Positions 8,106 through 36,493 of a stretch of DNA of 55,594 bases are shown piece after piece (within the stretch, counting starts at the first letter, position 1; each line of letters opens with the position of its first letter). Source of the stretch: Macrostomum lignano (taxonomy: Eukaryota); NCBI GenBank assembly GCA_002269645.1, contig NIVC01003092.1, positions 1 to 55,594 of the forward strand, given 5' to 3'. The notes beneath the pieces were generated by a model. It saw only the letters and a list, made by a program, of their open reading frames with translations. It was not told where the DNA came from and made no database searches. Position numbers and translations under genes: made by a program.

Positions 8106-9593
8106 ATGGCAAAACAACTTTTATCGATAAAGTTTGCTTATGTATTCGGTAAGTGACTGAACTATAGCCGCCACTATGATTTTAATACCAATTAGTTTTA
8201 CGCTTTAGGTTGCACTCTGTTCTTCAATGACAACAAAGTAAATTATCCCAACGCAGTTTGCTGCTCTCTCGTGCTTCGAGTACAAGGCACCAGTTTGCGG
8301 ACCTATTCTGTGTGCTCAGAGCAGCAGCTTCACATGCTGGAAGCCGTTCTGAACGCCTACAACAACGTCACGACAACAACCAAGGCCACTGATGCAACCG
8401 ACTGTCTAGCGAAGTGCCAGAGGGTGAGCTGCAGCGCTGCCGTCTCGGTGGAGAGCAATGCCACGTGCGAGATGGTCACCATAACAACCGCCAAGCTGTC
8501 AATCTCAGCAAATCAGGTGCAGCAAGTCATCGGATCTCAGGTCGGTGCGAAGGTGTGGAAGGCGGACGACAGCGACTGGCCTTCGCCTGCAGTGCAGCTT
8601 TGGAGTGAGTCATCAATGCATAGTCTTAGTCGTAAGTTGTTACCAAGATTTCGGCAGACAGAAATTGCACTCACTCCAGTTCTGCACGACGCTGCTCCGT
8701 TGCAGACAGCAGCACAGGTAGAAACGGCTCAATCCAAAGCGTCCTCATCAACACGACCGGCTGCTACCTGATCAAAGCTGCCGGCGCCAGAGGTGGCCAC
8801 AACTTACTGACGAACACACCCGGAGGCCAGGGAGCCCAGGTGAGCGCCAGAGTCAACCTGACAGCCGGCACCCAGCTGAGCATCGTTGTGGGCCAGATGG
8901 GCGGCTCGACCTCTCGAAATAGCGAAGGAGGCGGCGGAGGCGGCGGCAGCTTCGTGTACCGGACGGGTGACCAGCTGCTGCTGCTGGCTGCCGGCGGAGG
9001 CGGCGGAGCTTCTTGCTTAGAAAATGGTGAGCCCAGTAGCTGTAGTGTAAATTATAAAAAAAATCCACTTGAATCAACAATTTGATTTTACCGTAGGTAA
9101 ACCAGGAGAGACTGGGATAAACGGTTCTGACAGCCTGGGTAACGTCGCTAAATACACGGGATTCGGTGGCAGCAACGGTCAGCCGGGCTACAACAGCCCC
9201 GCTGACACCAGAAGCGATAGAACCCATGGAGGCTGCGGCGCCGGCTGGCTCGGCAGGGCCGTCAAGCGCAGGCGGAGCTCCTCGGACGGAGAGAGAGGCG
9301 GCAGTCTGGCCGACGGCTGGGTCGGCGGCAGCGCCGGAGACGGCAGCGTCTGCGACGGCGGCTTCGGTGGAGGCGGCGGAGGCGGCAGCAGGACCAGCTC
9401 ACTGAAAGGCGCCCCTGGAGCCGGCGGCGGCTTCAGCGGCGGCGGAGCCGGACTGAGCTACGGTCACGTCGGCGGCGGCGGCGGCTCCTTCTGCAGGGGC
9501 GGCTGCGTGTTCTGTGGCACCTCTACCGGGCACCAGGGCTTCGTCTCCGTCCTGCTGGAGTCGACCTCGGCCGCTTGCGATTCGGGCACCTGA
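8106..9593 (+). CDS. B1: secreted PAN/apple-like + ALK/LTK-type glycine-rich domain protein, 402 aa
   Basis: Exons 8106-8148, 8257-8604, 8706-9026, 9097-9593; all introns GT-AG phase 1; 1209 nt, open frame. Signal peptide MAKQLLSIKFAYVFVCCSLVLRVQG. PAN DCLAKCQRVSC...C. Gly-rich domain motifs GCYLIKAAGARGG, LSIVVGQMG, GGGGGGSF, LLAAGGGGG, GGSLADGWVGG, DGGFGGGGGG, GAGGGFSGG. Several N-x-S/T sequons; no TM segment before the stop. Confidence 0.9.
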
Positions 9594-10084
9594 TGCCATT
9601 GCAGCCGCTTGTTGACGTAGGGACTTACCAGTCTCTACTTGACGCTACTCTTCTGGGACATAAGAGTAAGGTTTAAAAAAGTAGACACAAGGAATCAGAT
9701 TAGCTTTCTCCACATATATTTGATTGAGTTCAGAAGAAAAGGGTCAACCTATTTTCTCAAAACTTTAATAGCTGAATTCGTTGAATACTGAGTTCAATTA
9801 CAATTCAATTATCATCAACTATAATACTAGTGCTGAAAACATTGTAAGTAGGGCAGGACATCAGAGTTGAGAAACTCTAATTATAACTACTTACCTGGTA
9901 CCTTATGTATAACTGCCGCCATACAACGTGGCCTATCTAGGAAATATAAGCTGCATGCTTTCAACTGACTTTCTTCACACTTATAAGTCAACTTTTCTAA
10001 AATAAATTTTTGCTGTTTTCTTCCTGAAATAACCCCGACCGAGATAATCTATTTTTACCTGATACTCGAATCTTTCACTGTTAC

Positions 10085-10345
10085 TGACTTTGCACTCAGA
10101 CAACTCGAACAGTTTTCAATTCCTAATTATTAATAAATACTCAATGCACTCGTCTGTCCGAAGCCACTCGTCGTTTTTTCCTGCCAGAGAATTTCTGGAG
10201 GTTTTTTTAGACGAGCGGAACAGATTTGTGAGCTCAGCTGTCTTTCAGCGTCTGCTTTCGGTGCATGCCAAGGCCGCTCGACTGCAGCTCCCTGCAGTTG
10301 CCTTCCTGCACGCATCCGCACCCTTCCGTACCATGCTTGCTCGCT
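10085..10345 (+). other. Conserved non-coding (or cryptic exon) element downstream of B1
   Basis: High-identity copies lie 3' of each intact B gene: 13300-13560, 20640-20845 and 34100-34375 (all minus). Confidence 0.75.
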
Positions 10346-10671
10346 CATGGGCTACGATGGGGAATTGAAAATCTTTTAAAAACTTGTTAAGTAGGCCGAG
10401 AAAATTTTAAACTGTAGCTTTCCCTAGCAGTTGAACATTTTGCCATGAAAACAAATCCTCGGGTTTACATGATGTACTTTCTGGCTCAGAAATTTGTGGT
10501 AATGATTTCGTTTTAACTTCTGTAGTCAGTGTTTAAGCTGACAAAGACTGCTAATTCAATACACCCTAATTAAATACTCGAAGCAATCTGCTTTGGTTTT
10601 TATTCTCGGAGCAACAATAGGTAAAAAATTACTTAAGCGGTCAATATATGCTTTTGGGAGATGCGGCAAGT

Positions 10672-11228
10672 TGGTAGAGATGCAGGGAGGCAGAGATGCA
10701 GGGCGGAGGCAGAGATGCAGGGTGGTGGCAGAGATGCAGGGAGGTGATAGAGACGCAGGGCGGAGGCAGAGATGCAGGGCGGTGGCAGAGATGCAAGGAG
10801 GTGGCAGAGATGCAGGAAGGTAGCAGAGATGCAGGGAGGTGGCAGAGATGCAGGAAGGTGGCAGAGATGCAGGAAGGTGGCAGAGATGCATGGAGGTGGC
10901 AGAGATGCAGGGAGGTGAGAGAGATGCAGGAAGGTGGCAGAGATGCATGGAGGTGGCAGAGATGCAGGGAGGTGATAGAGACGCAGGGCGGAGGCAGAGA
11001 TGCAGGGAGGTGATAGAGACGCAGGGCGGAGGCAGAGATGCAGGGAGGTGAGAGAGATGCAGGGCGGTGACAGAGATGCAGGGCGGTGACAGAGATGCAT
11101 GGAGGTGAGAAAGAGGCAGGGAGGTGAGAAAGAGGCAGGGAGGTGGCGGAGATGCAGGGAGGTGAGAGAGATGCAGGGCGGTGGCAGAGATGCAGGGAGG
11201 TGGCAGAGATGCAGGGATCGGTGACAGA
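10672..11228. repeat. 19-bp minisatellite (gcagagatgcagggaggtg and variants)
   Basis: About 29 imperfect copies read directly. Confidence 0.95.
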
Positions 11229-11289
11229 TGCTGGCTGCTTTCCTGCAGGCGCTTGTCTGAAACCGGCAATATTTGAGAGACCTCACGTG

Positions 11290-11410
11290 TGTTCAGGAAA
11301 CTGCAGGTCGGCATCGGTCAACTCTGAGCACAGGGGATGAGTCAACATCAGTTAGAATCTTCGAGCGCATAGGACTGATGCAGTCTGCAGCTTCAACAGG
11401 TACTTTGGTA
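11290..11410 (+). repeat. Innermost left arm of the B1/B2 inverted duplication
   Basis: Reverse complement of 12355-12478 (acctgttgaagctgcagactgcatcagtcctatg... versus acctgttaaagctgcagtctgcatcagtcctatg...). Confidence 0.85.
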
Positions 11411-11654
11411 ACTTAGAGCTCATGCTTTTTTACCACGGCTCCTATAAGTGAGTCATCATCCACTCAAATAATCTAATATATTGTCAAAGTCATCATTGTT
11501 ATTTTACCTGGGATATTTTCACTCGTGAAATCCTAAATCAATGACTCATATCAGTTACGTTAATACTCGCAGCAGGAAACAGTGCTACGATTTCAGGCCC
11601 ATTTTTTCTGAGCGTAATAATAATTAATAGTGATAATTGATTACACCTGCCCTA

Positions 11655-11812
11655 ATTGGCCAGCTGTGCAACCGACAGCTCAGCCGCAGCTATTGCGCGG
11701 CGCGGGGGTCGCTACGCACCCTCAATTACCCCACCTAATGCTGGGACCCATTTTACAGCTGGGTGAAGTGAAGCAATGCAGAGTTAAGTGTCTTGCTCAA
11801 GGGCACAAATGA
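11655..11812 (-). mobile_element. SINE body fragment, CORE-like
   Basis: caccctcaattacccc...ccattttacagctgggtgaa...gcagagttaagtgtcttg is shared with 38950-39035 and resembles the reverse MIR/CORE motif gttaagtgacttgcccaagg. The left part matches 44478-44570 and 33335-33375. Confidence 0.55.
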
Positions 11813-12004
11813 TGTTCATGGAGTTGGAGTTACCTACCGAATAGAAGTGTTGGTAAATGTGATAATCAAAGAAAGCTCCATTCCGCCATTGAAAGGAGTT
11901 CCAGTTTCCTAAATCTGAAAACTTAAAACTGTCCAGTCACCTTCAAGCTAATCAGCAATATTTTTCATCCAGCCTTCAATTTTGTGTGTCGATGTTGTGG
12001 AAGA

Positions 12005-12052
12005 GTCAATGTTGTCAATGTCAATGTCAATGTCAATGTTGTCAATGTTGTG
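12005..12052. repeat. (gtcaat)n / gttgtcaat microsatellite
   Basis: Read directly. Confidence 0.85.
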
Positions 12053-12354
12053 TGTCGCGTTTTAGAACTCTTTCTTAATTCAAAATGCACACTAGCTCTA
12101 TGTACACGTGACACTGTACATTGCATGAATCAATATTTCAACCCGCTTCACTTGACAATATATATAGTCTGACTTTGGCCAACTTGGGCCTCAAGAGTTT
12201 TGTCGTGCCTAAATGTCTCGCTTGTTCCTACTTAACAGCAGTGTGTGCTTGAGTATTTGGATATAGTTTAATGATGATACAGCTAATATAAAGTTAGATG
12301 GTCTCTAACTTACGTGAGCTGTGGCAAGAAAGCATGAATTCTAAATTGCAAATT

Positions 12355-12478
12355 ACCTGTTAAAGCTGCAGTCTGCATCAGTCCTATGTATTCGAAGATT
12401 CTGACTGATGCAGACCATGTGCTCAGAGTTGACTGTTGCCGACCCGCAGTGTCCCGAACACACGGGACATCAATCAGG
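12355..12478 (-). repeat. Innermost right arm of the B1/B2 inverted duplication
   Basis: Reverse complement of 11290-11410. Confidence 0.85.
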
Positions 12479-13290: not shown

Positions 13291-13299
13291 CTAGCTCCC

Positions 13300-13560: not shown

Positions 13561-13955
13561 CTAAAATGCTACACTACAATGTTCCCGTCACCAGCAGTAT
13601 AGCGCAAATATCTTAAAATTAACATCTTTGACGTTGATAAATGATGGATAAAAATTGAATTAACGGAGAAAACTTCAGAAAATATTAATGTAAAACCACG
13701 AACGAATCAGATTCATCATGCCTACTTTATAACCCTACCCAGACTATATTGTCTCTAGGCACAAATACGAGCGTATTCTATTTATCTTTAATGGTCTACT
13801 GGTCGCTATCACAGCCTCCCTAGCACTACAAGCGTAAGCTCTTTGTCTCAGAAGAAAAGCCTTAAGGTTCAAAAGAATAAGCAGCATTAATCAGTGACCA
13901 TCCAAGTTAAACCACGACTGGCCAAATCCCATTTCAACAAGCGGTTTCTGCGGCA

Positions 13956-16900
13956 TCAGGTGTCCAAGTTGCAGGTGGCTGAGTCCGACTCCAGCAGGAC
14001 GGACACGAAGCCCTGGTCGCCGGTCCAGGTGCCGCCGAACACGCAGCCGCCACTACAGAAGGAGCCGCCGCCGCCGCCGCTGTGGCCGAAGCCCAGTCCG
14101 GCTCCGCCACCGCTGAAGCCGCCACCACCTCCAGCCGTTCCATTAAGTGGGCTGGTCCTGCTGCCGCATCCGCCGCCTCCGCCGAAGCCTCCGTCGCAGA
14201 CGCTGCCATCTCCGGCGCTGCCGCCGACCCAGCCGTCGGCCAGACTGCCGCCTCTCTCTCCGTCCGAGGAGCTCCTCCTGGGGCTGACGGCCCTGCCGAG
14301 CCAGCCGGCGCCGCAGCCACCGTGGTTGCTATGGCTTGGGGTTCCAGAGGGGCTGTTGGAGCCCGGATTACCGTTGGTGCCGCCGAATCCAGCCAGGGTA
14401 GTGCCGGCACCAAGACTGTCAGAACCGTTTATCCCAGTCTCTCCCTGTTGTCCTACGGTATAATCAAGCAAGCTGCTTATCAGTGGCTTTTCGGTTCATA
14501 ATTTACATATTTTTAGCAAAATGCAGCCACTGAGCTCACCGTTTCTACTAAAGGAAGCTCCGCCGCCTCCGCCGGCAGCAAGCAGCAGCAGCTGGTCGAC
14601 CGTCCGGTACACAAAGCTGCCGCCCCCTCCACCGCCTCCTTCTAAATCCAAGGAGGTCGAGCCGCCCATCTGACCCACAACGATGCTCAGCTGTGTGCCG
14701 GCTGTCAGGTTGACTCTGGCGCTCACCTGGGCTCCCTGGCCTCCAGATGTGCTCCTCAGTAAGTTGTGGCCACCTCTGGCGCCGGCAGCTTTGATCAGGT
14801 AGCAGCCGGTCGTGTTGATGAGGACGCTTTGGATTGAGCCGTTTCTACCTGTGCTGCTGTCTGCAACGGAGCAGCGTCAGCGAGTTACAGAACTGGAGTG
14901 AGTGCAATTTTTGTCTGTGCCAGAATCGTAGTTGCGTTGGTTTGTGACTGGTTCTAACCTGTGACTATCCAGTTTTGAATCCCAATCTTCGGCCCTGCCA
15001 GTGTCGCCCTGCATGCGTTCTCTCTTCCACTTGTCCACGCTGTATGGACTGCTTGGCTCTGTGTGCCTTGAGTGGTGGCCTGGTGGGGGCGGGCTTTAGC
15101 CTCGGCGTCTTGTATTTGCATCTCGCTATGTTTACTCAGTGCTTTGGGATGTCTGTATGAGCTCAAAACTTTAGCTGTAAATTTTCGATTTGCCGTCATA
15201 TCTGATATCGACCGGTTAAAAATGGCCCAAGTTCTCACGGCTCTGAGAGACAAAGGCCTGCCGGCTTCGGTAAATACGAGGGGTGATCAAAAAGTTCTGC
15301 AACCTTTTGTTATAGCTTTTAGTTATAGAATCAGCAAAAGCCAAAAACTTACACATATGCGGCTATATCTGTTTGCTATATTTATATGCATTTTTGGCTT
15401 CCAAATGTGCTCCAGTAAAATTTCACAGCCATATATTTTCCATGTGTTTTCAGTAGCTGATGGAAACATCAAAAGACAGTGTTCGCTTCTATATCTTTAT
15501 GTGCATGCAACTTGGTTGCAAAGTGACAGAGATTCACACCATGTTTTGTGAATGTTTTAGCTGACTCTGCTCCATCATTTGACACAGTTGCCTGCTGTCT
15601 CGCATACTGCTTCATTCTATCCCGTCTCGTCTCCTTCGTCATACTCTATACAGTCGCGTCTGATGGCGCCCTAACTACTGACAAATGTAGAGGTTTATCC
15701 ATTCATAGAATGTTACTGTAAGTAGACTAATGCAAACACGCATAGCAAAACTTAAACTGTTAATCATGTTACTATTAAAACGGAGAAATGGATCATGTTA
15801 TCATTTATAATGAAAAAGATGAATCATGCTACTCGTATTATTCATATCTCGCAAAAATTGCTTATAAATACAAGCAAAAAATCCGAGATGGAATCTTAGA
15901 CTCGGAGCAGCCTCAAGAGGACTTGAGAACAACCAAGAACTACGAGGCTACATCTCTGAGAGAAGTAAATACCGTTCGGTAAGTCTTTGTTGGAGTCTTT
16001 GTTATTTGATTACTGAGAGCTTTGTTACCGCCGGCCGTACTGATCAGTTGATTTCTATAGAGTTGTTGACTTTGAGGCCTCCCTTTTCCTAAGGGATTGG
16101 ATAAGATCTGCGGACCGATACCGATACTCTTAGACGATTATCGATTGATTGATTTTGGTACCCTAGAGTAACAGATAGGGGCACAAGACTCTGATTCTCC
16201 CTCAGAAGACGCCCTCTCAGAGGACCTCGTTATTGTTACTGGGTAATAGATGTTACTACGTAATATTGCTAATAGGGCTCATCTCTGATTTTGATTACTA
16301 ATTTCGAAGAATACATTGACGTCGACAGATCGAATTGTTACGTTCACTAAAGTGCTCTCATACTCGGCCGACTTCAGAATCCAAGAAACTCCGGAGGAAG
16401 ACTACATTGAGGAGACAAGCTCTATGGATCTGTCTGACAACTGAGGAGCCCGCAATAGTGAGTGATCACTAAATTCTGTTCCCAGACTTGCGGTCTGGAA
16501 GTGGGAGTTTTTGAGTGACTAATCACCACTCTTAAACTACTCACAAAATCTAACCAGCCCGCCAAGCCGCCAGGCAAAGCCGCCAATTCAGACACCGGGT
16601 CGATTTTTCACCCGGTGTCTCACCATAGTTTCAATATACTAGCCTGCGTCATGAATTCTTCATCGTCAAAAAGCCAGCTCAATCAGTCGCCGAAGTCAGC
16701 AACTACGAATCCGCTCTTTGTGAGGACAGAAAGACAGCTGGTTGAGTTCCAGATCAAAGAGGAAGATGAGACTGGCCGCACTTGATTAGAATCAGGTTGC
16801 TACCGCGCATCTCCGTTCGTGGCAATGCTGCTGTTGATCTTCTTTAGGTTTAATGCGTTGGTCTGTGACTGCTTCTGACTTGTTACTAACCAGTTTTAGG

Positions 16901-17725
16901 CAACACTACTCTGCCCTGTCTATGTCGCCTTGCGTGCGTCCTTTCTCTCTCTCTCTGCCCACGCTGTAGAGGGGGGGAGGGCGTTACTCGGCTCTGCGTG
17001 CATGGGGTGGTGACTCGATGGGGGGTGGGCGCCGTCGCCCTTATATTTGCGTCTTGCTCCGTCTAATCAGCGGTTTTGGCTGCCTGCGACAACTCAAAGT
17101 TTTTTCTCTAAAGTTCTTCTTTGCATCACTGTTTTAATTGGTTTTGCCAACTACACTTTGATTTCGAACTTTTGCTTTTACGTGCCATTGCTGCTTTTGT
17201 ATCTTCTCTAGATTTAAAACCACCCACGACTATAAATTGCTGACTCACTCTGAAGATGCACTGCAGGCGAAGGCCAGTCGCTGTCGTTCGCCTTCCACAC
17301 CTTCGCACCGACCTGAGATCCGATGACTTGCTGCACCTGATTTGCTGAGATTGACAGCTTGGCGGTTGTTATGGTGACCATCTCGCACGTGGCATTGCTC
17401 TCCACCGAGACGGCAGCGCTGCAGCTCACCCTCTGGCACTTTGCTAGACAGTCGATATGAGTAGCCTTGGTTGTTGTCGTGACGTTGTTGTAGGCGTTCA
17501 GAACGGCTTCCAGCATGAGAAGCTGCTGCTCTGAGCACACAGAATAAGTCCGCAAACTGGTGCCTTGTACTCGAAGCACGAGAGAGCAGCAAACTGCGTT
17601 GGGGCAATGCGCGGTCAGTAATGAACAGCATGCATTGAATAACTGTGAGCAGCGGTTTTGAGTCAGGAAGGGAGTCACTTACCGAATAAGAAAAGTAATT
17701 GTAAAGACAAAATTTGATCAGTCAT
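13956..17725 (-). CDS. B2: secreted PAN + ALK/LTK-type glycine-rich domain protein, 401 aa; intron 2 expanded by about 2.3 kb of nested insertions
   Basis: Exons 17725-17683, 17593-17249, 14860-14540, 14452-13956; 1206 nt, open frame, phase-1 GT-AG introns. Signal peptide MTDQILSLQLLFLFVCCSLVLRVQG. Intron-2 homology to B3/B5 breaks near 14936 and resumes near 17214. Confidence 0.88.
14940..17213 (+). mobile_element. Two tandem copies of an unclassified ~350-450-bp dispersed repeat; the first is split by nested insertions
   Basis: 14942-15175 is similar to 16855-17100 (gcgttggt.tgtgactg...ccagtttt...gtcgcc.tgc.tgcgt...ctcaaa). 16790-16850 and 17110-17210 both match the 38090-38240 end of a third, inverted copy. 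Confidence 0.6.
15275..15620 (+). mobile_element. Tc1/mariner transposon 5' relic
   Basis: Mariner-type TIR start tacgaggggtgatcaaaagt at 15275. ATG at 15460 gives METSKDSVRFYIFMCMQLGCKVTEIHTMFCE, then after a frameshift DSAPSFDTVA, matching the mariner N-terminal HTH pattern (G..ATEIH..L..VYGD.APS..TV). Confidence 0.75.
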
Positions 17726-21269: not shown

Positions 21270-22825
21270 TCAACTAGTTAAACCCCACCTCAACAAGCGG
21301 TTGCAGTGCCACCAGGTGCCCGAGTCGCAGGCGGCTGAGGCCGACTCCAGTATGATAGACACGAAGCCCTGGTCCCCGATCCAGGTGCCGCCGAAGACGC
21401 AGCCGCCCTTGCAGAAGGAGCCGCCGCCGCCGCCGATGTGGCCGTGGCTCAATCCGGCTCCGCCGCCGCTGAAGCCGCCGCCGGCCCCAGGGGTGCCTTT
21501 CAGTGAGCTGGTCCTGTGGCCGCATCCGCCGCCTCCGCCGAAGCCTCCGTCGCAGACGCTGCCGTCTCCGGCGCTGCCGCCGACCCAGCCGTCGGCCAGA
21601 CTGCCGCCTCTCTCTCCGTCCGAGGAGCTCCGCCTGGGGCTGACGGCCCTGCCGAGCCAGCCGGCGCCGCAGCCTCCATGGGTTCTATCGCTTGGGGTGT
21701 CAGCGGGATTGTTGTAGCCCGGCTGACCGTTGCTGCCGCCGAATCCCATGTATGCGCTGTTTGCTCCGATGCTGTCAGAACCGTTTATCCCAGTCTCTCC
21801 CGGCTGTCCTACATTTAAATTAATCCAACTGCCGATGTAATCTTATGTAATCTAATGCCGGTTTTTGGTTCGCATATTGTAGAATCTACCCTACTGCCGC
21901 TACTGAGCTCACCATTTTCACCGGTTGATGCTCCGCCGCCTCCGCCGGCAGCTAGCAGCAGCAGCTGGTCGACCGTCCGGTACATGAAGCTGCCGCCCCC
22001 TCCGCCGCCTCCTTCGATATCCAACGACGTCGAGCCGCCCATCTGACCCACAACGATGCTCAGCTGTGTGCCGGCTGTCAGGTTGACTCTGGCGCTCACC
22101 TGGGCTCCCTGGCCTCCAGATGTGCTCCTCAGTAAGTTGTGGCCACCTCTGGCGCCGGCAGCTTTGATCAGGTAGCAGCCGGTCGTGTTGATGAGGACGC
22201 TTTCGATTGAGCCGTTTCTGCCTGTGCTGCTGTCTGCAATGAAGCAGCGTCAGCGAGTTATAGAACTGGATTGAGTGCAATTTCTGTCTGTGCCAAAATC
22301 ATGGTAACCATCCACAACTAAGACTATGTATTGATGACTCACTCCGAAGCTGCACTGCAGGCGAAGGCCAGTCGCTGTCGTCCGCCTTCCACACCTTCGC
22401 ACCGACCTGAGATCCGATGACTTGCTGCACCTGATTTGCTGAGATTGACAGCTTGGCGGTTGTTATGGTGACCATCTCGCACGTGGCATTGCTCTCCACT
22501 GAGACGGCAGCGCTGCACCTCACCCTCTGGCACTTTGCTAGACAGTCGATATGAGTGGCCTTGGTTGTAGTCGTGACGTTGTTGTAGGCGTTCAGAACGG
22601 CTTCCAGCATCTGAAGCTGTTGCTCTGAGCACACAGAATAGGTCCGCAAACTGGTGCCTCGTACTCGAAGCACGAGAGAGCAGCAAACTGCGTTGGGGCA
22701 ATGCGTGGTCAGTAATACAGTACACAGCATGCATGGAATAACTGTGAGCATAGGTTTTTAAGTCAAGATTGCAGTCACTTACCGAATAAGCAAAGTAATT
22801 GTAAAGACAGAACTTTATCATCCAT
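21270..22825 (-). CDS. B3: secreted PAN + ALK/LTK-type glycine-rich domain protein, 415 aa (C-terminally extended)
   Basis: Exons 22825-22783, 22687-22343, 22233-21913, 21808-21270; 1248 nt, open frame. TGG at 21312-21314 replaces the TGA of the paralogs and adds WWHCNRLLRWGLTS. Confidence 0.9.
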
Positions 22826-28648: not shown

Positions 28649-28770
28649 TGCTGGAATATGCTTGCTATGATGTAGCCGTGCATTGTGGGCTTGAGCAGCT
28701 ACTCAGTAAAGCTGGGATATTTTGGCACAGATAGTTAATTGCACAACCGGCTGATGCTGCTCCATTGCAG

Positions 28771-29005
28771 ACAGCAGCACAGGTAGAAACGGCTCAATCC
28801 AAAGCGTCGTCATCAGCATGACCGGCTGCTACCTGATCAAAGATGCCAGCGCAAAAGTAGGCAGAAACTTACTGACTTGCACATCCGGAGTCTGCCTGAC
28901 AGCCGGTGCACAGCTGAACACCGTTGTTGGACGGATGGGCGGCTCGACCTCCTTGGATTTGGAAGGAGGCGGCGGTGGCGGCAGCTTCGTTTTCCAGACG
29001 AGCAT
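28771..29005 (+). pseudogene. Isolated, degraded exon 3 of family B
   Basis: Conserved acceptor ccattgcag|acagcagcacaggtagaaacgg. Translates TGCYLIKDASAKVGRNLLTCTSG[deletion]LTAGAQLNTVVGRMGGSTSLDLEGGGGGGSF and is then truncated; no flanking exons. Confidence 0.9.
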
Positions 29006-30378: not shown

Positions 30379-31981
30379 TCGATGCTGTGCGTGGATAAAA
30401 CAAGGTTTCCTTAAAAGATCGGCCTTTTAGACATGTTTTAACTCTGCGTGCGCGCTCCATTGGAGAAAGGCTCCATCATTGGTCGAATTGGTTGAGCTTG
30501 TAGTTGAGATGCTTCACGGCTATTGGTGGGAGTCGCGCAATAGTCATGCAGTAGGTATTTTAAACTGTGTTTAGTGCAGAAATACAGTTTTGTACAAGTT
30601 TTTTTGTTTATTGTTTGTCTCCAATCTCAAATGATCATCGGCTTCATTAGACAATAGACCCACTGGTGGGAACAGTTCCATCGTGAGTAGAACTCTTTGT
30701 TTCAAATTCGAATTCAGCAAAAAGTTTCATCTACAGTTGAATGAATCCCCGACAGAAGCGCAAGATCAAGTTCTAGCACTGCCCAGACACCTCAGATGAA
30801 TACCAATTTACAAGTTCGCTGCTGGCGATAATAAACTGGCTACCTGAATATTTACTTAATCAAGAATAATTTTGATTTGGCGTGTCTAGAAAACTCCAGA
30901 AAATATCTGGTACGATATAACGACAAGCGGCTGGTGACATACAGGTACAAATCGATTGTGTTCAAGGTTAGTTTTACTGCAACAGGTGTAGTGTGTTTCA
31001 AATGCGTAGTTGATTAGTTCAGCAAAGGTTCCAGACCTGCGTGCCAATGGGTCCCTCTTTGTACACAGAAAAGCTGCACAATTTTTGTCAAGATCAAAAG
31101 AAAACTTTATAACCCTCATGTGTTGGGAAGTGAGCGAAACAGAAGCAGCATAGAAGTCAAGCTAATCTTAACATTCCTAGCTCTGCAGCAACGAAGGCGA
31201 ATACGTTGAAAAGTAGCTCGCCTATGATATTATCTGACAGAAGTTCCAGGCGATGTTTCAGGTGCAGCACAATGGCAGAGATCGTGCGTAAGGAATTAAA
31301 ACAACCAAAGTTATAAAATCTCCTGCACCTGTTCCCTTTATTACTGATGATAACTCTTGCGTCTCTTCTCTTGAATTGAATCGTAAATACTCGTGATGAA
31401 ACTGTGGTCAGCAAAATCAAGTGTCTTTTGTTGCTAAATTTTCCAAGACTTGAAATCTACCGAGACAGATAAAAGCAACCAAGCTCAATTGTGAGTCGAT
31501 AGCGGGAAACCTGTTACAAAAGTATCAGGAAAAATCGATCAATTAGAAGTAGACCAAAAAAAACAATTGAACCGGTGCCAGCATTAAATCGCATATTCCA
31601 AATTTAAGTTGCGAGTTAGGGTTAGGGTTTGAGTTTGGGTTGGGCTCGTAGGGATGCAAAATATTTAATTTTTATCACTATCAGAAACTTTCTCAAGGAA
31701 GATAAAATAGAATAAATTGTCAGCGTTAGCATGAAAACAACCAAAAGCTCACTAAATCAATACATCTGCTCTATGAATACATCTTCGTTATTGTTCAGTC
31801 AAGTTAATACGTAAAAACAACCTATGGAATTCATTCGACGCTCGTATGGCTACTGAGAAATAATCGAGCAGCAGCATCAGGTGTCCAAGTCGCAGGTGGC
31901 TGAGGCCGACTCCAGCAGGACGAACACGAAGCCCTGGACGCCGGTCCAGGTCCCGCCGAAGACGCAGCCGCCCCGGCAGAA

Positions 31982-32209
31982 CCGCCGCAGCCGCCAATGT
32001 GGCCCTGACCCAGTCTGGCCCCGCCGACGCTGAAGCCACCGCCGCAGCCGCCAATGTGGCCCTGACCCAGTCTGGCCCCGCCGACGCTGAAGCCACCGCC
32101 GCAGCCGCCAATGTGGCCCCGACCCAGTCTGGCCCCGCCGACGCTGAAGCCACCGCCGCAGCCGCCAATGTGGCCCTGACCCAGTCTGGCTCCGCCGACG
32201 CTGAAGCCA
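31982..32209. repeat. 4 x 57-bp tandem duplication inside psi-B4 (GGGFSVGGARLGQGHIGGC)
   Basis: Units start at 31982, 32039, 32096 and 32153. Confidence 0.95.
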
Positions 32210-32510
32210 CCGCGGGTCCATCGAAGACGCTGCCGTCTCCGGCGCTGCCGCCGAACCAGACATCGGCCAGACGACTGCCGCTTCTCTTTTACTCTCTCCG
32301 AGCAGCCTGCCTGGGGCAACTCGGCCCTGCCGAGTTAGCGGGCTCCGCAGCCGCCGTGGTGCTAGCGGAGGTGTGTTAGTGGGGTTTTTGACGTCCGGCT
32401 GACCGTTGATGCCACCGAATCCCGCGTTGAGGCTGTAGCCGTCCAGTCCGTCGAAACCGTCAATTCCAGCCTCACCCGGTTGTTCTACGGTGAAATCCAT
32501 CAATCTGCTT

Positions 32511-32869
32511 TTTTTAGAGGCAGGGGGTTGTGTGCACCCTGGCGCACTTTAAGCGACATAGGCACACAACCGGCGAGAGGCATTACTGCCCATTCCGCCG
32601 ACTCCCTTGAGCAGGCATACAAGCGCGCGGATACGTACGCAGGCACACACTCACACAGGAGTGTACAGCGGCCCTAACTTTATATTATCGTTAGGCATGT
32701 ACACTTTACTGCGCCTTGGGGGGGTTGGCTCTCAAGGCCGTTAATTTCACGAGCAGAGCCAAGCCGAGATTCCAGTTCAGCCCCAAATTAATGTGACTGC
32801 ACTTGGAATCGAGCCTGGGTCGCTGGCACACCAGAGCAGCTGCGCTACCGCTGGGCTACGGCCCCCCAT
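32511..32869 (-). mobile_element. Full-length tRNA-derived SINE (~360 bp) with A-tail and 13-bp TSD
   Basis: TSD catcaatctgctt at 32498-32510 and 32870-32882. The minus-strand head ggggccgTAGCCCAGCGGtagcgc...GGCTCGATTCC carries A and B boxes; the 3' end is an oligo-A. Confidence 0.88.
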
Positions 32870-33639
32870 CATCAATCTGCTTACTCGGGTGGTTGCGGAT
32901 TTTCATAATTTACAATTCAAGCAACTGCTGCCACTGAGATCACCATTTGATTGAAGGAGGCCTCGGTGCCTCCTCTGATAGTTTGATTGTCAGCCTTCAT
33001 TTCTTGCGATTTTCTTGAACAAAGGCTCGAGAAATAGCTATTTTACCTGACAACTAAAATTCCAAATCGATATTGAGTTGTTTGAGGTGCCCTGCTTCAG
33101 CGGGCTGCTGCGATTAATGAGTGAGAAATTGACGCAGCTGCAGTCTGGTGCACCAGAGTGGCAGAATTCAAGCTAAGTCTGAGACAGCTCCATCAATAGA
33201 TGATTCTGGGTGCTGCTACTCAGAAGTGAGCTCCATTGTTATGGAGACCCAGAAGCTTTTATGCGTTTCCTGAAAAAATTCCTTACTTTTCAACTAAAAA
33301 AAAATCAGTGATTAAATCTGCCTTAAAGAGAAAATATGCAACCGACAGCCCAGCAGCAGCTATTGCGGCTTTTCAACTACAGTTGTGACAGCCGTTAAAT
33401 CTTTCAATTAGTTTTGCACTGAAGCTCTACCACTGTATAAACTTTCAGTATAAATCTTAAAATGTCCTGACTGCCGTGAATGCTGTTGTTTTTCAGCAAT
33501 TTAGGAGCTTTTGCATCATTGCGCTGGTCATCTTCTAAAAGTTTTAACCAGGCATTCCTAACGTCCTTATTTGCGAGTCATTGTGCAGAGTTGGGGAACC
33601 TGTAGTTAGGTTTAGCTCGATAGAAAGAAAATCAGAAAA

Positions 33640-33990: not shown

Positions 33991-34099
33991 AGCAACCCGA
34001 GTATTAGAATTCATGATTATATTTTCAACTGCTAATAAAAATACTTTTTGGAACTTAAATTTAAATCCTGCTGACTGAATTGTGATCCATCAGTGAGCC

Positions 34100-34375
34100 C
34101 TAGCGTGCAGTACGGAAGGGCGCAGATGCCAGATGCGTGCAGGAAGGCAACTGCAGGGAGCTGCAGCCGAGCGACCTTGGCATGGGCCGAAAGCAGAAAC
34201 TGAAAGACAGCTGAGCTCAAAAATCTGTTCCGCTCGTCTAAAAAACCTCTAGAAATTGTCTGGCCGGAAAAAAAGACGAGCGGCTTCGGACAGACGAGTG
34301 CATTCAGTGTTTATTAATAATTAGGAATTGAGAACTGTTTGAGTTGTCTGAGTTCCAAGTCTGTAGCAGTGAAAG
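34100..34375 (-). other. Conserved downstream element of B5
   Basis: Reverse-complement homolog of 10085-10345, near-identical over long stretches. Confidence 0.75.
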
Positions 34376-34994
34376 GTTCGAGAACCAGTTAAATAGCTGT
34401 TTAGTTAGGGATTAAGGAAAGAAACAGCAAAAATGTATTGACGAAAAATTGCTTACTCGCGTGAAAATAATTAAATTAATAGAAAATAACAAGTCTTGAG
34501 TAAAAAGCCACACAATAGTTATGCGCCTGAGTCTTATGTTAGAGACTTTAAAAGCCACTCACACTACTAGTGATGAGACGTTACTAAGTATTTTAGTTAG
34601 ATTTATAGAGTTACTTAACTCTGAAGTCCTACACTACCTACGAAGCTTGCATTACCAGTATTATTGTGTTAATAATTATGCTTTAAACAAATTGCCAACC
34701 TGGGAGAACGTATGGAAATTGAGAATTTGTAAACAGAAATTTATTACTGAAAATTAGAACTGCAGAATTAAATTATTTTAAAAATAGCCAACTCAGATTC
34801 ATTTTGTGTACTTTTATAAACGATAGTTCCACAAATATTTACTCCACTAATCGCTACCACGGCTCCCTTGCACGTAGCCTTTTTTCACACAGGACAAGCG
34901 ACAATGTTCACAGGAATAAGCAGTATTAATCAGTGATCGTCCGAGTTAAAACACGACTGGCCAATCCCCACTTCAAAAAGCGGTTTCTGTGACA

Positions 34995-36493
34995 TCAGGT
35001 GCCCGAGTCGCAGGCGGCTGAGGCCGACTCCAGCAGGACAGACACGAAGCCCTGGTCGCCGGTCCAGGTGCCGCCGAACACGCAGCCGCCCCTGCAGAAG
35101 GAGCCGCCGCCACCGCCGCTGTGGCCCTGGGCCAGTCCGGCTCCGCCCCCGCTGAAGCCACCGCCGGCTCCAGGGGCGCCTTTCTCTGAGCTGGTCCTGT
35201 GACCGCCTCCACCGCCTCCGCCGAAGCCTCCATCGCAGACGCTGCCGTCTCCGGCGCTGCCGCCGACCCAGCCGTCGGCCAGACTGCCGCCTCTCTCTCC
35301 GTCCGAGGAGCTCCGCCTGGGGTTGACGGCCCTGCCGAGCCAGCCGGCGCCGCAGCCGCCGTGGTTGCTTTCGCTTGGAGTGTCAGCGGGGTTGTTGAAG
35401 CCTGGCTGACCGTTGATGCCGCCGAATCCTGCGTTTGGTTTGTAGTCACCCAGACTGTCGGAACCGTTGATCCCAGTCCCTCCCGGTAGCCCTACGATGA
35501 AATCAATCAAACTGCTTATCCAAGTTAAATTTTCGCTTTTGAAACTTCCCAATTCTAGCAACAAAGTTAATGAGATCACCATTTCTTTTGAAGCAAGCTC
35601 CGCCGCCTCCGCCGGCAGCAAGCAGCAGCAGCTGGTCGACCGTCTGGTACACGAAGCTGCCGCCGCCTCCGCCGCCTCCTTCGATATCCAACGACGTCGA
35701 GCCGCCCATCTGGCCCACAACGATGCTCAGCTGGGTGCCGGCTGTCAGGTTGACTCTGACGCTCACCTGGGCTCCCTGGCCTCCGGATGTGTTCGTCAGT
35801 AAGTTGTCGCCACCTCTGGCTCCGGCAGCTCTGATCAGGTAGCAGCCGGTCGTGTTGATGAGGACGCTTTGGATTGAGCCGTTTCTACCTGTGCTGCTGT
35901 CTGCAGTGGAGCAGCGTCAGCGAGTTACAAAATGGGAGTGAGTGCAATTTCTGTCTGTGCCAAAATCATGTAAGCCACCCACAACTAAGACTATGCATTG
36001 ATGACTCACTCCGAAGCTGCACTGCAGGAGAAGGCCAGTCGCTGTCGTCCGCCTTCCACACCTTCGCACCGACCTGAGATCCGATGACTTGCTGCATCTG
36101 ATTTGCTGAGATTGACAGCTTGGCGGTTGTTATGGTGACCATCTCGCACGTGGCATTGCTCTCCACCGAGACGGCAGCGCTGCAGCTCACCCTCTGGCAC
36201 TTTGCTAGACAGTCGGTTGCATCAGTGGCTTTGGTTGTTGTTCTGACGTTGTTGTAGACGTTCAGAACGGCTTCCAGCATGTGAAGCTGCTGCTCTGAGC
36301 ACACAGAATAGGTCCGCAAACTGGTGGTGCCTTGTACTCGCAGCACGAGAGAGCAGCAAACTGCGTTGGGGCAATTGGTTGTCATTAATAAATAGCATGC
36401 ATTGAATAACTTTTAGCAGCGGTTTTTAAGTCAAGATTGCAGTCACTTACCGAATAATAAAAGCAATTGTAAAGACAGAATTTTATTAGTCAT
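34995..36493 (-). CDS. B5: secreted PAN + ALK/LTK-type glycine-rich domain protein, 403 aa
   Basis: Exons 36493-36451, 36360-36010, 35900-35580, 35491-34995; 1212 nt, open frame. The intron-3 donor is GTGATC (weaker than GTGAGC in the paralogs). Signal peptide MTNKILSLQLLLLFVCCSLVLRVQG. Confidence 0.88.

What the first reader, a model, noticed from the sequence alone, without database searches (positions are those of the whole stretch)
8106..36493. Expanded family of secreted 'ALK-ectodomain-only' proteins: PAN module + glycine-rich domain, no TM or kinase
Seen: four intact 4-exon genes (B1, B2, B3, B5) and three relics encode signal peptide + PAN + a domain with the motif order of the ALK/LTK glycine-rich region, then stop. 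Established: in ALK/LTK this region is the ligand-binding and dimerising part, built on polyglycine-II helices, and is followed by EGF-like, TM and kinase domains. PGII bundles also form binding surfaces in phage gp38 adhesins and snow-flea antifreeze protein. Inference: this is a tandemly amplified soluble binder family (ligand decoy, pattern-recognition, mucus/adhesive or reproductive secretion). I do not recognise this architecture as a named gene family.
Basis: partly seen in the sequence, partly recalled or inferred. Interest (0 to 1): 0.88.

Follow-up and report, generated by a model that had tools for sequence, protein, structure and literature searches.

The report
Secreted flatworm PAN-plus-glycine-rich-domain gene cluster
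A flatworm (Macrostomum lignano) gene cluster encodes four intact secreted proteins made of a divergent PAN/Apple module and the same TNF-like plus polyglycine domain that forms the ligand-binding part of the ALK/LTK receptors. That domain proves to be a widespread kinase-independent binding module (cnidarians, bacteria, phage tail fibres), so the genes are real and uncharacterised but less exotic than first thought.

Summary
Window 8106-36493 carries four intact four-exon genes (B1 +; B2, B3, B5 -), all GT-AG, 84-88% identical in protein, under purifying selection (dN/dS 0.45-0.48). There are decayed relics as well.

Each gene encodes a hydrophobic signal-type N-terminus, a four-cysteine PAN-like domain of about 100 aa, and a C-terminal domain of about 270 aa. 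The protein stops 11-13 residues after the last strand. I found no TM segment and no kinase motif anywhere in the window.

The C-terminal domain is homologous to the ALK/LTK TNF-like plus glycine-rich region:
- Pfam PF12810 is just above cut-off for B1.
- A family profile hits only ALK, SCD-2 and LTK in the PDB (E 2e-11 to 7e-8).
- An AlphaFold model hits only ALK/LTK structures (E 2e-11 to 7e-7).

PAN is supported only indirectly.

The framing needs correction. These genes are already TrEMBL entries of Macrostomum lignano. Their nearest relatives are cnidarian secreted PAN/EGF/lectin-GRD proteins, not ALK. The domain has over 5,400 cluster representatives, including bacteria and a choanoflagellate. 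Fold matches extend to phage tail-fibre and virion proteins and giant viruses.

Most likely function: secreted extracellular binding or recognition proteins. This is inferred, not shown. I rate it a new variant of a known kind, of moderate interest.

The parts
8106..9596 (+). Gene B1. Exons 8106-8148, 8257-8604 (alternative acceptor 8209), 8706-9026, 9097-9593, then a TGA stop. 402 aa.
   Evidence: GT-AG, intact frame. Pfam PF12810 scores 26.2 bits against a cut-off of 24.5.
13953..17725 (-). Gene B2. Exons 17725-17683, 17593-17249, 14860-14540, 14452-13956, then a stop. 401 aa. Intron 2 is 2.4 kb because of an inserted repeat-flanked element.
   Evidence: 97% identical to UniProt A0A1I8HRN4 (P0001), with an identical exon 4. 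Intact only with the downstream exon-2 acceptor.
21270..22825 (-). Gene B3. Exons 22825-22783, 22687-22343, 22233-21913, 21808-21273, then TGA at 21272-21270. 415 aa. The ancestral stop is mutated (TGA to TGG), giving a 15-aa extension.
34992..36493 (-). Gene B5. Exons 36493-36451, 36360-36010, 35900-35580, 35491-34995, then a stop. 403 aa.
   Evidence: Pfam PF12810 scores 20.2 bits, below the cut-off.
28719..29001 (+). Relic A. An isolated exon-3-like fragment (start of the GRD) with an internal deletion. It ends in a stop and has no exon 2 or 4 nearby.
   Evidence: tblastn 63-66% identity, E up to 4e-21. nhmmer E 4e-69.
31869..33067 (-). Relic B, a gutted gene. The 5' region has lost its ATG (32977-33067). 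An intron-3-like piece lies at 32871-32974. The exon-4-like part (32518-31869) is frame-shifted and carries a 4x tandem expansion of a 19-codon unit. Exon 2 and most of exon 3 are deleted.
38014..38091 (-). Relic C, outside the stated span. An orphan exon-1-like fragment with an ATG and the start of the signal peptide. It has a 1-nt insertion and has lost its GT donor.
   Evidence: nhmmer E 6.6e-8. Alignment.
10060..10345 (+). Conserved block of about 250 nt downstream of B1. Copies lie behind B2 (13590-13318), B3 (20875-20635) and B5 (34385-34100). It holds an AATAAA signal and a 9-bp perfect inverted repeat. It is probably the 3'UTR or polyA region of the duplication unit.
   Evidence: No Rfam hit.

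Best explanation
The window is Macrostomum lignano DNA (a free-living flatworm). It holds a young tandem and inverted array of genes for small secreted, N-glycosylated two-domain proteins.

After a cleavable signal peptide (M..LSLQLLLLFVCCSLVLRVQG|T, inferred) comes a divergent PAN/Apple-like domain of about 100 aa with four core cysteines. One intron further on comes a domain of about 270 aa with the fold of the ALK/LTK 'TG' region. In that fold a TNF-like beta-sandwich has a lattice of polyglycine-II helices inserted into it. The protein ends 11-13 residues after the last sandwich strand.

These are not truncated ALK receptors. They belong to a large, old family of kinase-less proteins that carry this domain at their C-terminus. 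The nearest relatives are cnidarian secreted proteins: PAN_1-COLFI-like-EGF-GRD in corals, EGF-GRD in Nematostella, and EGF-C-type-lectin-GRD in a jellyfish. More distant ones occur in a choanoflagellate and bacteria, with fold matches in phage tail-fibre and virion proteins and in giant viruses.

Proposed mechanism (inferred). The proteins are extracellular binders. The invariant glycine motifs and beta-strands form a rigid scaffold. The loops between them, which are the most variable parts among the paralogues, would form the binding surface. This is how ALK/LTK bind cytokines and how the Pam3 phage fibre tip is described as recognising the host receptor. The PAN-like module would add a second protein or glycan contact. 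The likeliest role is recognition or adhesion in mucus, at the epithelial surface or in innate defence. This fits the two neighbouring gene families in the same window, which pair a signal peptide and PAN-like exon with classical lectin domains (F-type lectin; fibrinogen-related).

Shown: gene structure, intactness, purifying selection, homology and fold of the GRD, absence of a TM segment or kinase, and phyletic spread. Inferred: secretion, the PAN assignment, the binding function and the ligand class.
For: Gene models and splice sites.

Organism: P0001 is 97% identical to B2. The chimeric UniProt model P0310 spans the same gene order as window 4147-14463.

Purifying selection: dN/dS 0.45-0.48, binomial P 2e-4 to 9e-4.

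GRD homology:
- Pfam PF12810 scores 26.2 bits against a cut-off of 24.5 for B1.
- A profile of 69 family members hits only ALK, SCD-2 and LTK among 177,635 PDB sequences, E 2.3e-11 to 7.1e-8, across the whole domain.
- The AF2 model has pLDDT of about 80-96 over most of the GRD. Its top 21 Foldseek PDB hits are all ALK/LTK/SCD-2 TG domains, probability 1.0, E 2.4e-11 to 6.9e-7, TM 0.39-0.60.

No TM or kinase: a single N-terminal hydrophobic segment, no kinase motif in six frames, and stop codons at the homologous position in B1, B2 and B5, in divergent paralogues and in corals.

Relatives:
- Corals, E 1e-26 to 1e-23, with architecture PAN_1...GRD.
- Nematostella, Sanderia (C-type lectin + GRD), Bicosta, Verrucomicrobiota, Bacillus, Brocadiia.
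- 5,407 cluster representatives at E<=1e-3.
- 80 viral fold matches at E<=1e-3, the best at 3e-17 and 5e-14, including virion structural and tail-fibre proteins.

[quoted passage not shown] They propose a conserved glycine stem with a hypervariable receptor-binding tip, and report similarity to C. elegans ALK 7LIR (PMC9608196).

Paralogue variation is concentrated in inter-glycine loops: codons 231-275 and 331-350 have pN 0.13-0.27, against 0-0.06 in the strands and glycine runs.

Neighbour genes: PAN_1 + Fibrinogen_C (5e-31) and Cys-rich + F5/8C/FTP.

PAN: the N-domain profile matches, at hhalign probability 96.8% and E 2.5e-10, a paralogous domain that passes the Pfam PAN_1 cut-off. The top 17 fold hits are all PAN domains.
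Against: - There are no expression, localisation or binding data.
- The signal peptide is judged only by hydropathy and the -3/-1 rule.
- PAN is not detected directly by Pfam or by profile comparison with coral PAN domains. The fold hits are sub-significant (E 0.14-1.6) on a model of pLDDT 65.
- No window of the alignment shows convincing dN/dS>1, so there is no signature of diversifying selection as seen in many immune recognition families.
- The lectin neighbourhood is circumstantial. The PAN-like exons of the neighbours are not demonstrably homologous to the B N-domain.
- The match to the solved Pam3 fibre itself is not significant (7ypx, E 0.37).
Confidence: 0.6

Rival explanations
1. Structural or material secretion. 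The proteins would be bulk components of a flatworm secretion (mucus, rhabdites, adhesive or cement gland product, eggshell, seminal fluid). The rigid glycine lattice would be used as a building block, not a specific binding surface. Gene amplification would serve dosage.
For: There are many near-identical copies. At least about 27 TrEMBL entries fall in the ten 90%-identity clusters I looked up, and four intact genes lie in 28 kb. dS mosaics indicate concerted evolution, which is typical of dosage families. The domain is 28-30% glycine. There are 7-9 N-glycosylation sequons per protein. There is no signature of diversifying selection.
Against: The domain is a compact globular fold with conserved cysteines, not a low-complexity repeat. 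In the two contexts where the fold has been studied (ALK/LTK and the Pam3 fibre), its role is described as specific recognition. The partner modules in relatives are recognition modules (PAN, C-type lectin, EGF).
Confidence: 0.2
2. Soluble decoy or modulator of ALK signalling. The free GRD would sequester the flatworm's ALK ligand (Jeb/HEN-1-type) or heterodimerise with the ALK receptor.
For: The domain is homologous to the ligand-binding and dimerising part of ALK/LTK. Soluble receptor ectodomains acting as decoys are a well-established principle.
Against: The B proteins are far closer to cnidarian secreted GRD proteins (41-45% identity, E about 1e-26) than to any ALK. Identity to ALK/LTK is 18-25% in structural alignment, and phmmer to LTK gives E 0.15. 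The same kinase-less architecture exists in organisms and viruses that have no ALK. M. lignano has several deeply diverged PAN-GRD subfamilies (33-49% identity), which is more than a single-ligand decoy needs. Conservation of ligand-contact residues was not tested.
Confidence: 0.07
3. Not independent functional genes. They would be decaying duplicates, or mis-joined exons of a larger gene such as an ALK-like receptor whose remaining exons lie elsewhere.
For: The region does contain decayed copies (relics A-C). B3 has lost its stop. M. lignano gene models are often chimeric (P0135, P0310).
Against: There are four complete frames of 401-415 codons across canonical introns. dN/dS is 0.45-0.48, significantly below 1. 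The stop is conserved at the same position in distant paralogues and in cnidarians. B1 and B2 are tail-to-tail, with only repeats between them. There is no kinase motif in the window. A polyA signal lies 120-540 nt downstream of each stop.
Confidence: 0.03

Closest known systems
ALK / LTK / SCD-2 extracellular TG region (TNF-like + glycine-rich domain; Pfam PF12810; PDB 7N00, 7NX3, 7NX1, 7LRZ, 7LIR)
   Same: It is the same domain. There is profile-level homology over the whole region (E 2e-11 to 7e-8) and the same fold (Foldseek probability 1.0). The conserved motifs are shared: Y-x-I-x-A-x-G-A-x-G-G, L-x-I-V-V-G-Q-x-G, G5-S-F-V-Y, LL-x-AAGGGGG and GGFGGGGGG. The topology matches too, with beta-strands before and after the glycine lattice.
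   Different: There is no EGF-like module, TM helix or kinase, and no MAM or LDLa. Identity is only 18-25%. A PAN-like module sits in front. The proteins are secreted rather than membrane-bound. The ligand is unknown.
Cnidarian secreted GRD proteins. RefSeq and UniProt names include 'loricrin-like', 'putative lysozyme-like protein' and 'uncharacterized transmembrane protein DDB_G0289901-like'. Examples are Stylophora P0088/P0098, Porites P0090, Pocillopora P0052, Montipora P0042, Nematostella XP_048576998 and Sanderia P0139.
   Same: These are the best non-flatworm matches (E 1e-33 to 1e-23, 41-45% identity). They share a signal peptide, an N-terminal PAN, and a GRD as the last domain ending a few residues after the final strand. 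They have no TM or kinase. An intron sits exactly at the front boundary of the GRD. They are uncharacterised.
   Different: Corals insert a COLFI-like segment and 0-2 calcium-binding EGF domains between PAN and GRD. Their PAN passes Pfam PAN_1, whereas the flatworm N-domain does not. The coral GRD is one exon, while the flatworm GRD is split by a phase-1 intron. Homology of the two PAN modules is not demonstrable.
Phage tail-fibre or virion proteins with TNF-like + glycine-rich tips (Pam3 gp24, PDB 7YPX; many predicted cyanophage, Caulobacter-phage and giant-virus proteins)
   Same: The two-part fold is the same. There are 80 BFVD matches at E<=1e-3. The best are 3e-17 and 5e-14 (TM 0.64, 29% identity), which is stronger than the match to ALK. 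The authors of the Pam3 gp24 structure propose a conserved glycine stem and variable distal loops that bind the host receptor (PMC9608196). This matches the pattern of conservation and variation among B1-B5.
   Different: The viral proteins are trimeric fibres anchored by N-terminal helices or collars, and some need a chaperone. The flatworm proteins have a signal peptide and a PAN-like domain, and their oligomeric state is unknown. The match to the solved 7YPX chain itself is not significant (E 0.37).
Invertebrate secreted lectin-type recognition families (fibrinogen-related proteins, F-type lectins). This is a comparison of how the proteins may work, not of membership.
   Same: They are small secreted proteins built as signal peptide + N-terminal module + C-terminal recognition domain, and they are tandemly amplified. 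Genes of exactly these two kinds, each with a PAN-like first module, lie in the same window (4147-4950, 29613-30382, 40999-42029).
   Different: The C-terminal domain is a GRD, which has no documented glycan-binding activity. There is no demonstrated diversifying selection.

Membership tests
PF12810 ALK_LTK_GRD (TNF-like + glycine-rich domain) superfamily | Match to the Pfam profile at or above the gathering score (24.5 bits) | tested here: met
   B1 scores 26.2 bits, residues 164-388. B5 alone scores 20.2 bits, below the cut-off. Many M. lignano paralogues and the coral relatives carry precomputed PF12810 hits.
PF12810 ALK_LTK_GRD (TNF-like + glycine-rich domain) superfamily | Profile-level sequence homology to the experimentally defined ALK/LTK/SCD-2 domains | tested here: met
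   A profile of 69 family members was searched against all PDB sequences. The only hits are ALK, SCD-2 and LTK, E 2.3e-11 to 7.1e-8, aligned over profile positions 34-333.
PF12810 ALK_LTK_GRD (TNF-like + glycine-rich domain) superfamily | Fold: a beta-sandwich with an inserted polyglycine-II lattice | tested here: met
   AF2 model of P0001 (97% identical to B2), pLDDT about 80-96 over most of the domain. Strands lie at 144-243 and 391-410, flanking a region that is mostly without regular secondary structure. The top 21 Foldseek hits are all ALK/LTK/SCD-2, probability 1.0.
ALK/LTK receptor tyrosine kinases | Transmembrane helix after the ectodomain | tested here: not met
   The only hydrophobic 19-residue windows above 1.6 lie within residues 1-29. 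The stop comes 11-13 codons after the last strand.
ALK/LTK receptor tyrosine kinases | Cytoplasmic tyrosine kinase domain | tested here: not met
   No kinase family in Pfam scans of the proteins. No HRDxAARN or HRD...N motif in any frame of the 55.6-kb window.
ALK/LTK receptor tyrosine kinases | EGF-like module directly after the GRD | tested here: not met
   Only ...LLESASAACDSGT follows the last strand, and there is no EGF hit.
ALK/LTK receptor tyrosine kinases | Binding of ALKAL, Jeb or HEN-1 ligands | not testable with these tools
   This needs binding assays. Conservation of contact residues was not examined because the primary structure papers were not held.
PAN/Apple domain (Pfam PAN_1 PF00024; PROSITE Apple) | Match to the Pfam PAN profile at the gathering score | tested here: not met
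   No PAN hit at E<=1 for the full proteins or for the isolated N-domain. UniProt nevertheless names P0001, P0002 and P0018 'Apple domain-containing protein', as the source wrote it.
PAN/Apple domain (Pfam PAN_1 PF00024; PROSITE Apple) | Homology to a domain that does pass the PAN profile | tested here: met
   The second N-domain inside the M. lignano model P0135 scores PAN_1 23.5 bits against a cut-off of 21.4. The B N-domain profile aligns to it with hhalign probability 96.8%, E 2.5e-10. Comparison with coral PAN domains is not significant (probability 0.5%).
PAN/Apple domain (Pfam PAN_1 PF00024; PROSITE Apple) | PAN fold (helix packed on a beta-sheet, core disulfides) | tested here: inconclusive
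   The N-domain model has pLDDT 65. The top 17 Foldseek hits are all PAN (HGF N domain, Sarcocystis SML-2) but at E 0.14-1.6 and probability 0.2-0.7. The motif C-x3-C-x4-C-x11-12-C holds in most paralogues; three of these cysteines are invariant and the first is present in at least 90% of sequences.
Cnidarian secreted PAN-...-GRD proteins | The GRD is the closest relative and is the terminal domain of a secreted protein | tested here: met
   E 1e-33 to 1e-23, 41-45% identity. Both end within about 2-13 residues of the last strand.
Cnidarian secreted PAN-...-GRD proteins | Intervening COLFI-like segment and calcium-binding EGF domains; single-exon GRD | tested here: not met
   Neither is present in B1-B5. 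The coral GRD is one 299-codon exon, whereas the flatworm GRD is split by a phase-1 intron.
Phage TNF-like + glycine-rich tail-fibre tips (Pam3 gp24 type) | Fold similarity to viral fibre or virion proteins | tested here: met
   80 BFVD matches at E<=1e-3, the best at 3.3e-17 and 4.7e-14. The match to the solved 7YPX chain is E 0.37 only.
Phage TNF-like + glycine-rich tail-fibre tips (Pam3 gp24 type) | Trimeric fibre with an N-terminal helical shaft or collar | not tested
   No multimer prediction was available. The N-terminal part here is a signal peptide and a PAN-like domain, not a helical shaft.

The most novel reading that the evidence does not exclude
Free-standing TNF-like/polyglycine domains would be an ancient class of secreted metazoan recognition proteins, shared by cnidarians and flatworms and related to bacterial and phage adhesin tips. 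The ALK/LTK ectodomain would have been recruited from this class by exon shuffling. In M. lignano the domain would work as a new type of lectin-like or pattern-recognition head. It would be interchangeable with fibrinogen-related and F-type-lectin heads behind a common signal-peptide and PAN-like front end in one genomic cluster.
Probability: 0.2. Interest if true: 0.7.

Novelty: new variant of a known kind. Interest (0 to 1): 0.45.

Why it matters
The ALK/LTK glycine-rich region is usually treated as a peculiarity of two receptor kinases. These genes, and the relatives found with them, show that the same fold is a modular, kinase-independent extracellular domain. It has been reused in flatworms, cnidarians, a choanoflagellate, bacteria and viruses.

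M. lignano is an experimentally tractable flatworm (my own knowledge: RNAi, in situ hybridisation and transgenesis are established). That makes it a practical place to ask what a free GRD binds. The answer could show what ALK's ectodomain did before it was coupled to a kinase, and whether animals use the fold for recognition as the phage fibre is proposed to.

There is also a practical annotation point. Dozens of kinase-less proteins, flatworm and viral, are named 'receptor protein-tyrosine kinase' in UniProt solely because of this domain. Several M. lignano models of this locus are chimeric.

Tried and rejected
I used P0001 (97% identical to B2) and the single-exon N-domain instead.
2. It frame-shifts B2, and sequence conservation starts downstream of it.
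3. Direct PAN detection failed. Pfam gave nothing at E<=1. hhalign against coral PAN domains gave probability 0.5%. A profile search of the PDB gave 0 hits. A profile search of 5.8 billion proteins found the N-domain only in M. lignano.
4. Homology of the B N-domain to the PAN-like exons of the neighbouring lectin genes is not significant.
5. A sliding-window dN/dS search for diversifying selection found no window with robust pN/pS>1. The few values above 1 rest on 3-5 synonymous changes.
6. Rfam found no known RNA in the window, including the conserved downstream block. Four copies are too few to judge covariation.
7. The coral genomic context (L001) showed a single called gene in 23 kb and was uninformative about tandem arrays.
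8. Literature searches found no functional study of kinase-less animal GRD proteins. What I found was a note on three PF12810 proteins in the fungus Drechmeria (PMC4859500), a Gly_rich abbreviation in a sea-anemone multi-omics paper (PMC13514124) and the Pam3 phage fibre paper. A full-text request by PMC id for one of the 2021 ALK structure papers (Reshetnyak et al.) found it not held.
9. The third protein-homology search was left unused. It would again have listed only the top coral and flatworm hits.

Full report
WHAT IS THERE

The window is eukaryotic. Between 8106 and 36493 I reconstructed four complete genes from the raw sequence.
- B1 (+): exons 8106-8148, 8257-8604, 8706-9026, 9097-9593.
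- B2 (-): exons 17725-17683, 17593-17249, 14860-14540, 14452-13956.
- B3 (-): exons 22825-22783, 22687-22343, 22233-21913, 21808-21273.
- B5 (-): exons 36493-36451, 36360-36010, 35900-35580, 35491-34995.

All introns are GT-AG and all three junctions are phase 1. The products are 401-415 aa. The finding's end coordinates are the two outermost start codons, so they are exact.

One correction concerns exon 2. The acceptor conserved in all four copies is aacgcag|TTTGCTGC. The more upstream acceptor (8209 in B1) puts B2 out of frame because of a 5-nt deletion. DNA similarity between copies begins only at about 8241-8247. With the common acceptor every protein starts M-x3-(L/I)LS(L/I)-x-(L/F)-x3-FVCCSLVLRV(Q/R)G|T, which looks like a textbook signal peptide.

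The copies are 85-96% identical in DNA and 84-88% in protein.

THE GENES ARE REAL, NOT CHANCE ORFS OR DEAD COPIES

Pairwise dN/dS is 0.45-0.48. In every pair, non-synonymous changes are fewer than neutral expectation (binomial P 2e-4 to 9e-4). The pairs are not independent of one another.

The decayed copies make a useful contrast.
- Relic A (28719-29001, +) is a lone exon-3 fragment with an internal deletion.
- Relic B (31869-33067, -) has lost its ATG, exon 2 and most of exon 3. Its exon 4 is frame-shifted and carries a fourfold expansion of a 19-codon unit.
- Relic C (38014-38091, -), just outside the stated span, is an orphan exon 1 with a 1-nt insertion and no donor site.

ORGANISM AND DATABASE STATUS

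The best database matches are all Macrostomum lignano TrEMBL entries. P0001 (A0A1I8HRN4, 'Apple domain-containing protein') is 97% identical to B2 and has an identical exon 4.

P0310 ('FTP domain-containing protein') is a chimeric gene model. It strings together the same three neighbours seen in window 4147-14463: an F-type-lectin gene, a B1-like gene, and the antisense strand of a B2-like gene.

The ten 90%-identity clusters I looked up hold at least about 27 TrEMBL entries. Many are fragments. Many are named 'receptor protein-tyrosine kinase' although they have no kinase. The same misnaming appears on phage proteins, so it evidently follows the domain hit.

The genes are therefore catalogued. 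Eight full-text searches found no functional study.

THE C-TERMINAL DOMAIN

- Pfam PF12810 (ALK_LTK_GRD) matches B1 at 26.2 bits against a cut-off of 24.5. B5 is below the cut-off at 20.2 bits. Single-sequence phmmer to PDB gives LTK only at E=0.15.
- At family level the homology is clear. A profile of 69 flatworm and cnidarian members hits only ALK, C. elegans SCD-2 and LTK among 177,635 PDB sequences. E is 2.3e-11 to 7.1e-8, aligned across the whole domain.
- An AlphaFold2 model of P0001 has pLDDT of about 80-96 over most of this domain. Beta-strands lie at 144-243 and 391-410, either side of a glycine-rich stretch that is mostly without regular secondary structure. This is the 'TNF-like sandwich with inserted glycine lattice' topology.
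- Foldseek against the PDB returns ALK/LTK/SCD-2 TG structures as its top 21 hits (probability 1.0, E 2.4e-11 to 6.9e-7, target TM 0.39-0.60). Nothing else is significant.

THE N-TERMINAL DOMAIN

PAN is the weakest part of the observation.
- Pfam finds no PAN at E<=1.
- A profile of the domain finds nothing in the PDB.
- The same profile finds only M. lignano proteins among 5.8 billion sequences.
- It does not match coral PAN domains.

There is indirect support.
- The same profile aligns with probability 96.8% (E 2.5e-10) to a paralogous M. lignano domain that does pass Pfam PAN_1, at 23.5 bits against a cut-off of 21.4.
- Three of the four cysteines of the motif C-x3-C-x4-C-x11-12-C are invariant across subfamilies, and the first is present in at least 90% of sequences.
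- A separate, mediocre model (pLDDT 65) gives PAN domains (HGF N domain, Sarcocystis SML-2 lectin) as its top 17 fold hits, though at E 0.14-1.6.

I call it a divergent PAN-like domain.

NO MEMBRANE ANCHOR, NO KINASE

- Each protein has one hydrophobic segment, at the N-terminus.
- The stop comes 11-13 codons after the last beta-strand in B1, B2 and B5. The divergent paralogues and the cnidarian proteins also end a few residues after their last strand. B3 reads through for 15 codons because TGA became TGG.
- B1 and B2 are tail-to-tail, with only tandem repeats between them.
- No kinase catalytic-loop motif occurs in any frame of the window.
- AATAAA or ATTAAA signals lie 120-540 nt after each stop.

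HOW FAR THE FAMILY EXTENDS

After the M. lignano paralogues, the next-best hits are stony-coral proteins at E 1e-33 to 1e-23 and 41-45% identity. M. lignano itself has several deeply diverged PAN-like-GRD subfamilies at 33-49% identity.

Pfam shows the coral proteins to be signal peptide-PAN_1-(COLFI-like)-0 to 2 EGF_CA-GRD, ending right after the GRD. In Porites each module is one exon. An intron sits exactly at the front edge of the GRD, as in the flatworm. The flatworm GRD has one extra internal intron.

An exhaustive HMM search of 1.84 billion cluster representatives found 5,407 relatives at E<=1e-3 and 1,505 at E<=1e-10. Many are giant multi-GRD proteins. Sampled members are:
- Nematostella 'loricrin' (EGF + GRD);
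- the jellyfish Sanderia (EGFs + C-type lectin + GRD);
- the choanoflagellate Bicosta;
- Verrucomicrobiota, Bacillus and Brocadiia proteins.

Foldseek against predicted viral structures gave 80 matches at E<=1e-3. The best two (3e-17; 5e-14 with TM 0.64 and 29% identity) are stronger than the match to ALK. The hits include cyanophage virion structural proteins, tail-fibre and tail-collar proteins, and giant-virus proteins.

'ALK-ectodomain-only' is therefore the wrong frame. ALK/LTK are one branch of users of an old, widespread extracellular module.

HOW IT PROBABLY WORKS

Two lines of experimental work bear on this fold. In ALK/LTK it binds the cytokine ligand and mediates dimerisation (titles of PDB entries 7N00, 7NWZ and 7NX0; established knowledge).

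The cyanophage Pam3 fibre gp24 has been solved by cryo-EM. [quoted passage not shown] They describe a conserved glycine-rich stem and propose a hypervariable distal tip as the receptor-binding site. They note structural similarity to C. elegans ALK (PMC9608196).

Among B1-B5 the strands and glycine runs are nearly invariant (pN 0-0.06). Replacements pile up in the inter-glycine loops at codons about 231-275 and 331-350 (pN 0.13-0.27). This is the same conserved-scaffold, variable-loop pattern.

The partner modules in relatives are recognition modules: PAN, C-type lectin and EGF. In this very window two other gene families have the same layout, with classical lectin heads.
- A Cys-rich PAN-like exon plus an F-type-lectin (F5/8C) domain, in two copies 92% identical (4147-4950 + and 30382-29613 -).
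- A PAN_1 exon plus a fibrinogen-related domain (42029-40999 -; Fibrinogen_C E 5e-31).

I therefore favour secreted binding or recognition proteins, acting at the surface, in mucus or in innate defence.

This is inference. There are no expression or binding data. No window shows convincing positive selection. The neighbours' PAN-like exons are not demonstrably homologous to the B N-domain.

The main rival is a bulk structural or secretory-material role. Copy number and signs of concerted evolution fit it. A decoy for ALK ligands is unlikely given the distance to ALK and the presence of the architecture in ALK-less lineages. Pseudogenes or fragments of a larger receptor gene are essentially excluded.

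EVOLUTION OF THE ARRAY

Synonymous divergence is mosaic. dS is about 0-0.04 over codons 71-190 and 291-320, but 0.25-0.37 elsewhere. The PAN-like exon is far more uniform (dS 0.04-0.09) than the GRD (0.17-0.23). This indicates gene-conversion tracts within the array.

The duplication unit includes about 270-300 bp upstream in B2, B3 and B5, and a conserved downstream block.

VERDICT

It is neither an ALK derivative nor an unrecognised architecture. It is a flatworm variant of a widespread, catalogued but functionally unexplored family of kinase-less GRD proteins. Interest is moderate.

Noticed in passing
window 10060-10345 (+), 13318-13590 (-), 20635-20875 (-), 34100-34385 (-): A non-coding block of about 250 nt lies 400-550 bp downstream of the stop of each intact B gene. 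It is 75-89% identical between copies, while the sequence between it and the stop aligns poorly and is full of indels. It contains ATTAATAAATAC (a polyA signal) followed by a perfect 9-bp inverted repeat, CCGCTCGTC...GACGAGCGG, which encloses a second small hairpin. There is no Rfam match. It could be a 3'UTR/polyA region, a MITE-like repeat or an ncRNA; this is not resolved.
   Followed up: partly
window 4147-4950 (+) and 29613-30382 (-): Two copies (92% identical) of a two-exon gene. It encodes a signal peptide, a Cys-rich PAN-like segment, and an F5/8-type-C or F-type-lectin domain (Pfam F5_F8_type_C_2, E 1.7e-8). The UniProt chimeric model P0310 is named 'FTP domain-containing protein'.
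   Followed up: partly
window 40999-42029 (-): A gene with a PAN_1 exon (21.5 bits against a cut-off of 21.4) followed by a fibrinogen-related domain (Fibrinogen_C E 5e-31). It is a third 'PAN-like + recognition head' gene type in the same window.
   Followed up: partly
window 14861-17248 (B2 intron 2); 38155-38474: B2's intron 2 is 2.4 kb, against about 100 bp in B1, B3 and B5. Its two ends (14966-15185 and 16873-17180) both resemble 38155-38474 in the same orientation. This suggests an inserted element with LTR-like direct repeats, and a solo copy near 38.3 kb.
   Followed up: no
window 8257-9593 and paralogues (codon alignment): Synonymous divergence between paralogues is mosaic. dS is about 0-0.04 in codons 71-190 and 291-320, against 0.25-0.37 elsewhere. 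This indicates gene-conversion tracts. The PAN-like exon is homogenised much more than the GRD.
   Followed up: partly
window 10556-11314 and 12700-13310: Two arrays of a tandem repeat of about 57 bp (19 codons) lie in inverted orientation to each other. They fill the tail-to-tail spacer between B1 and B2.
   Followed up: no
window 46861-55594: A tandem satellite of period about 664 bp, with at least 13 copies about 99% identical, runs to the end of the window.
   Followed up: no
window 44750-45055 and 46166-46471; 42079-42482: A 306-bp segment is duplicated at 100% identity 1.4 kb apart. Separately, a region of about 400 bp is its own reverse complement at 85% identity (a palindrome).
   Followed up: no
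database entries P0003-P0005, P0121-P0129, P0135, P0310; viral hits: UniProt names kinase-less GRD proteins 'receptor protein-tyrosine kinase', both the M. lignano fragments and many phage proteins. Several M. lignano gene models are chimeras: P0135 fuses two PAN-GRD genes with IFT140, and P0310 fuses a lectin gene, a B1-like gene and antisense B2. This is an annotation artefact worth flagging.
   Followed up: partly
window 18462-18914 (-): An ORF upstream of B2 contains '...RQRKTGSSNFFGSFRNYQT...'. This resembles the spurious N-terminus of the UniProt model P0001 ('ARPQRRTGSGNFFGSFRSYQT'). It may be an upstream non-coding exon, a UTR or a repeat joined to the gene model.
   Followed up: no
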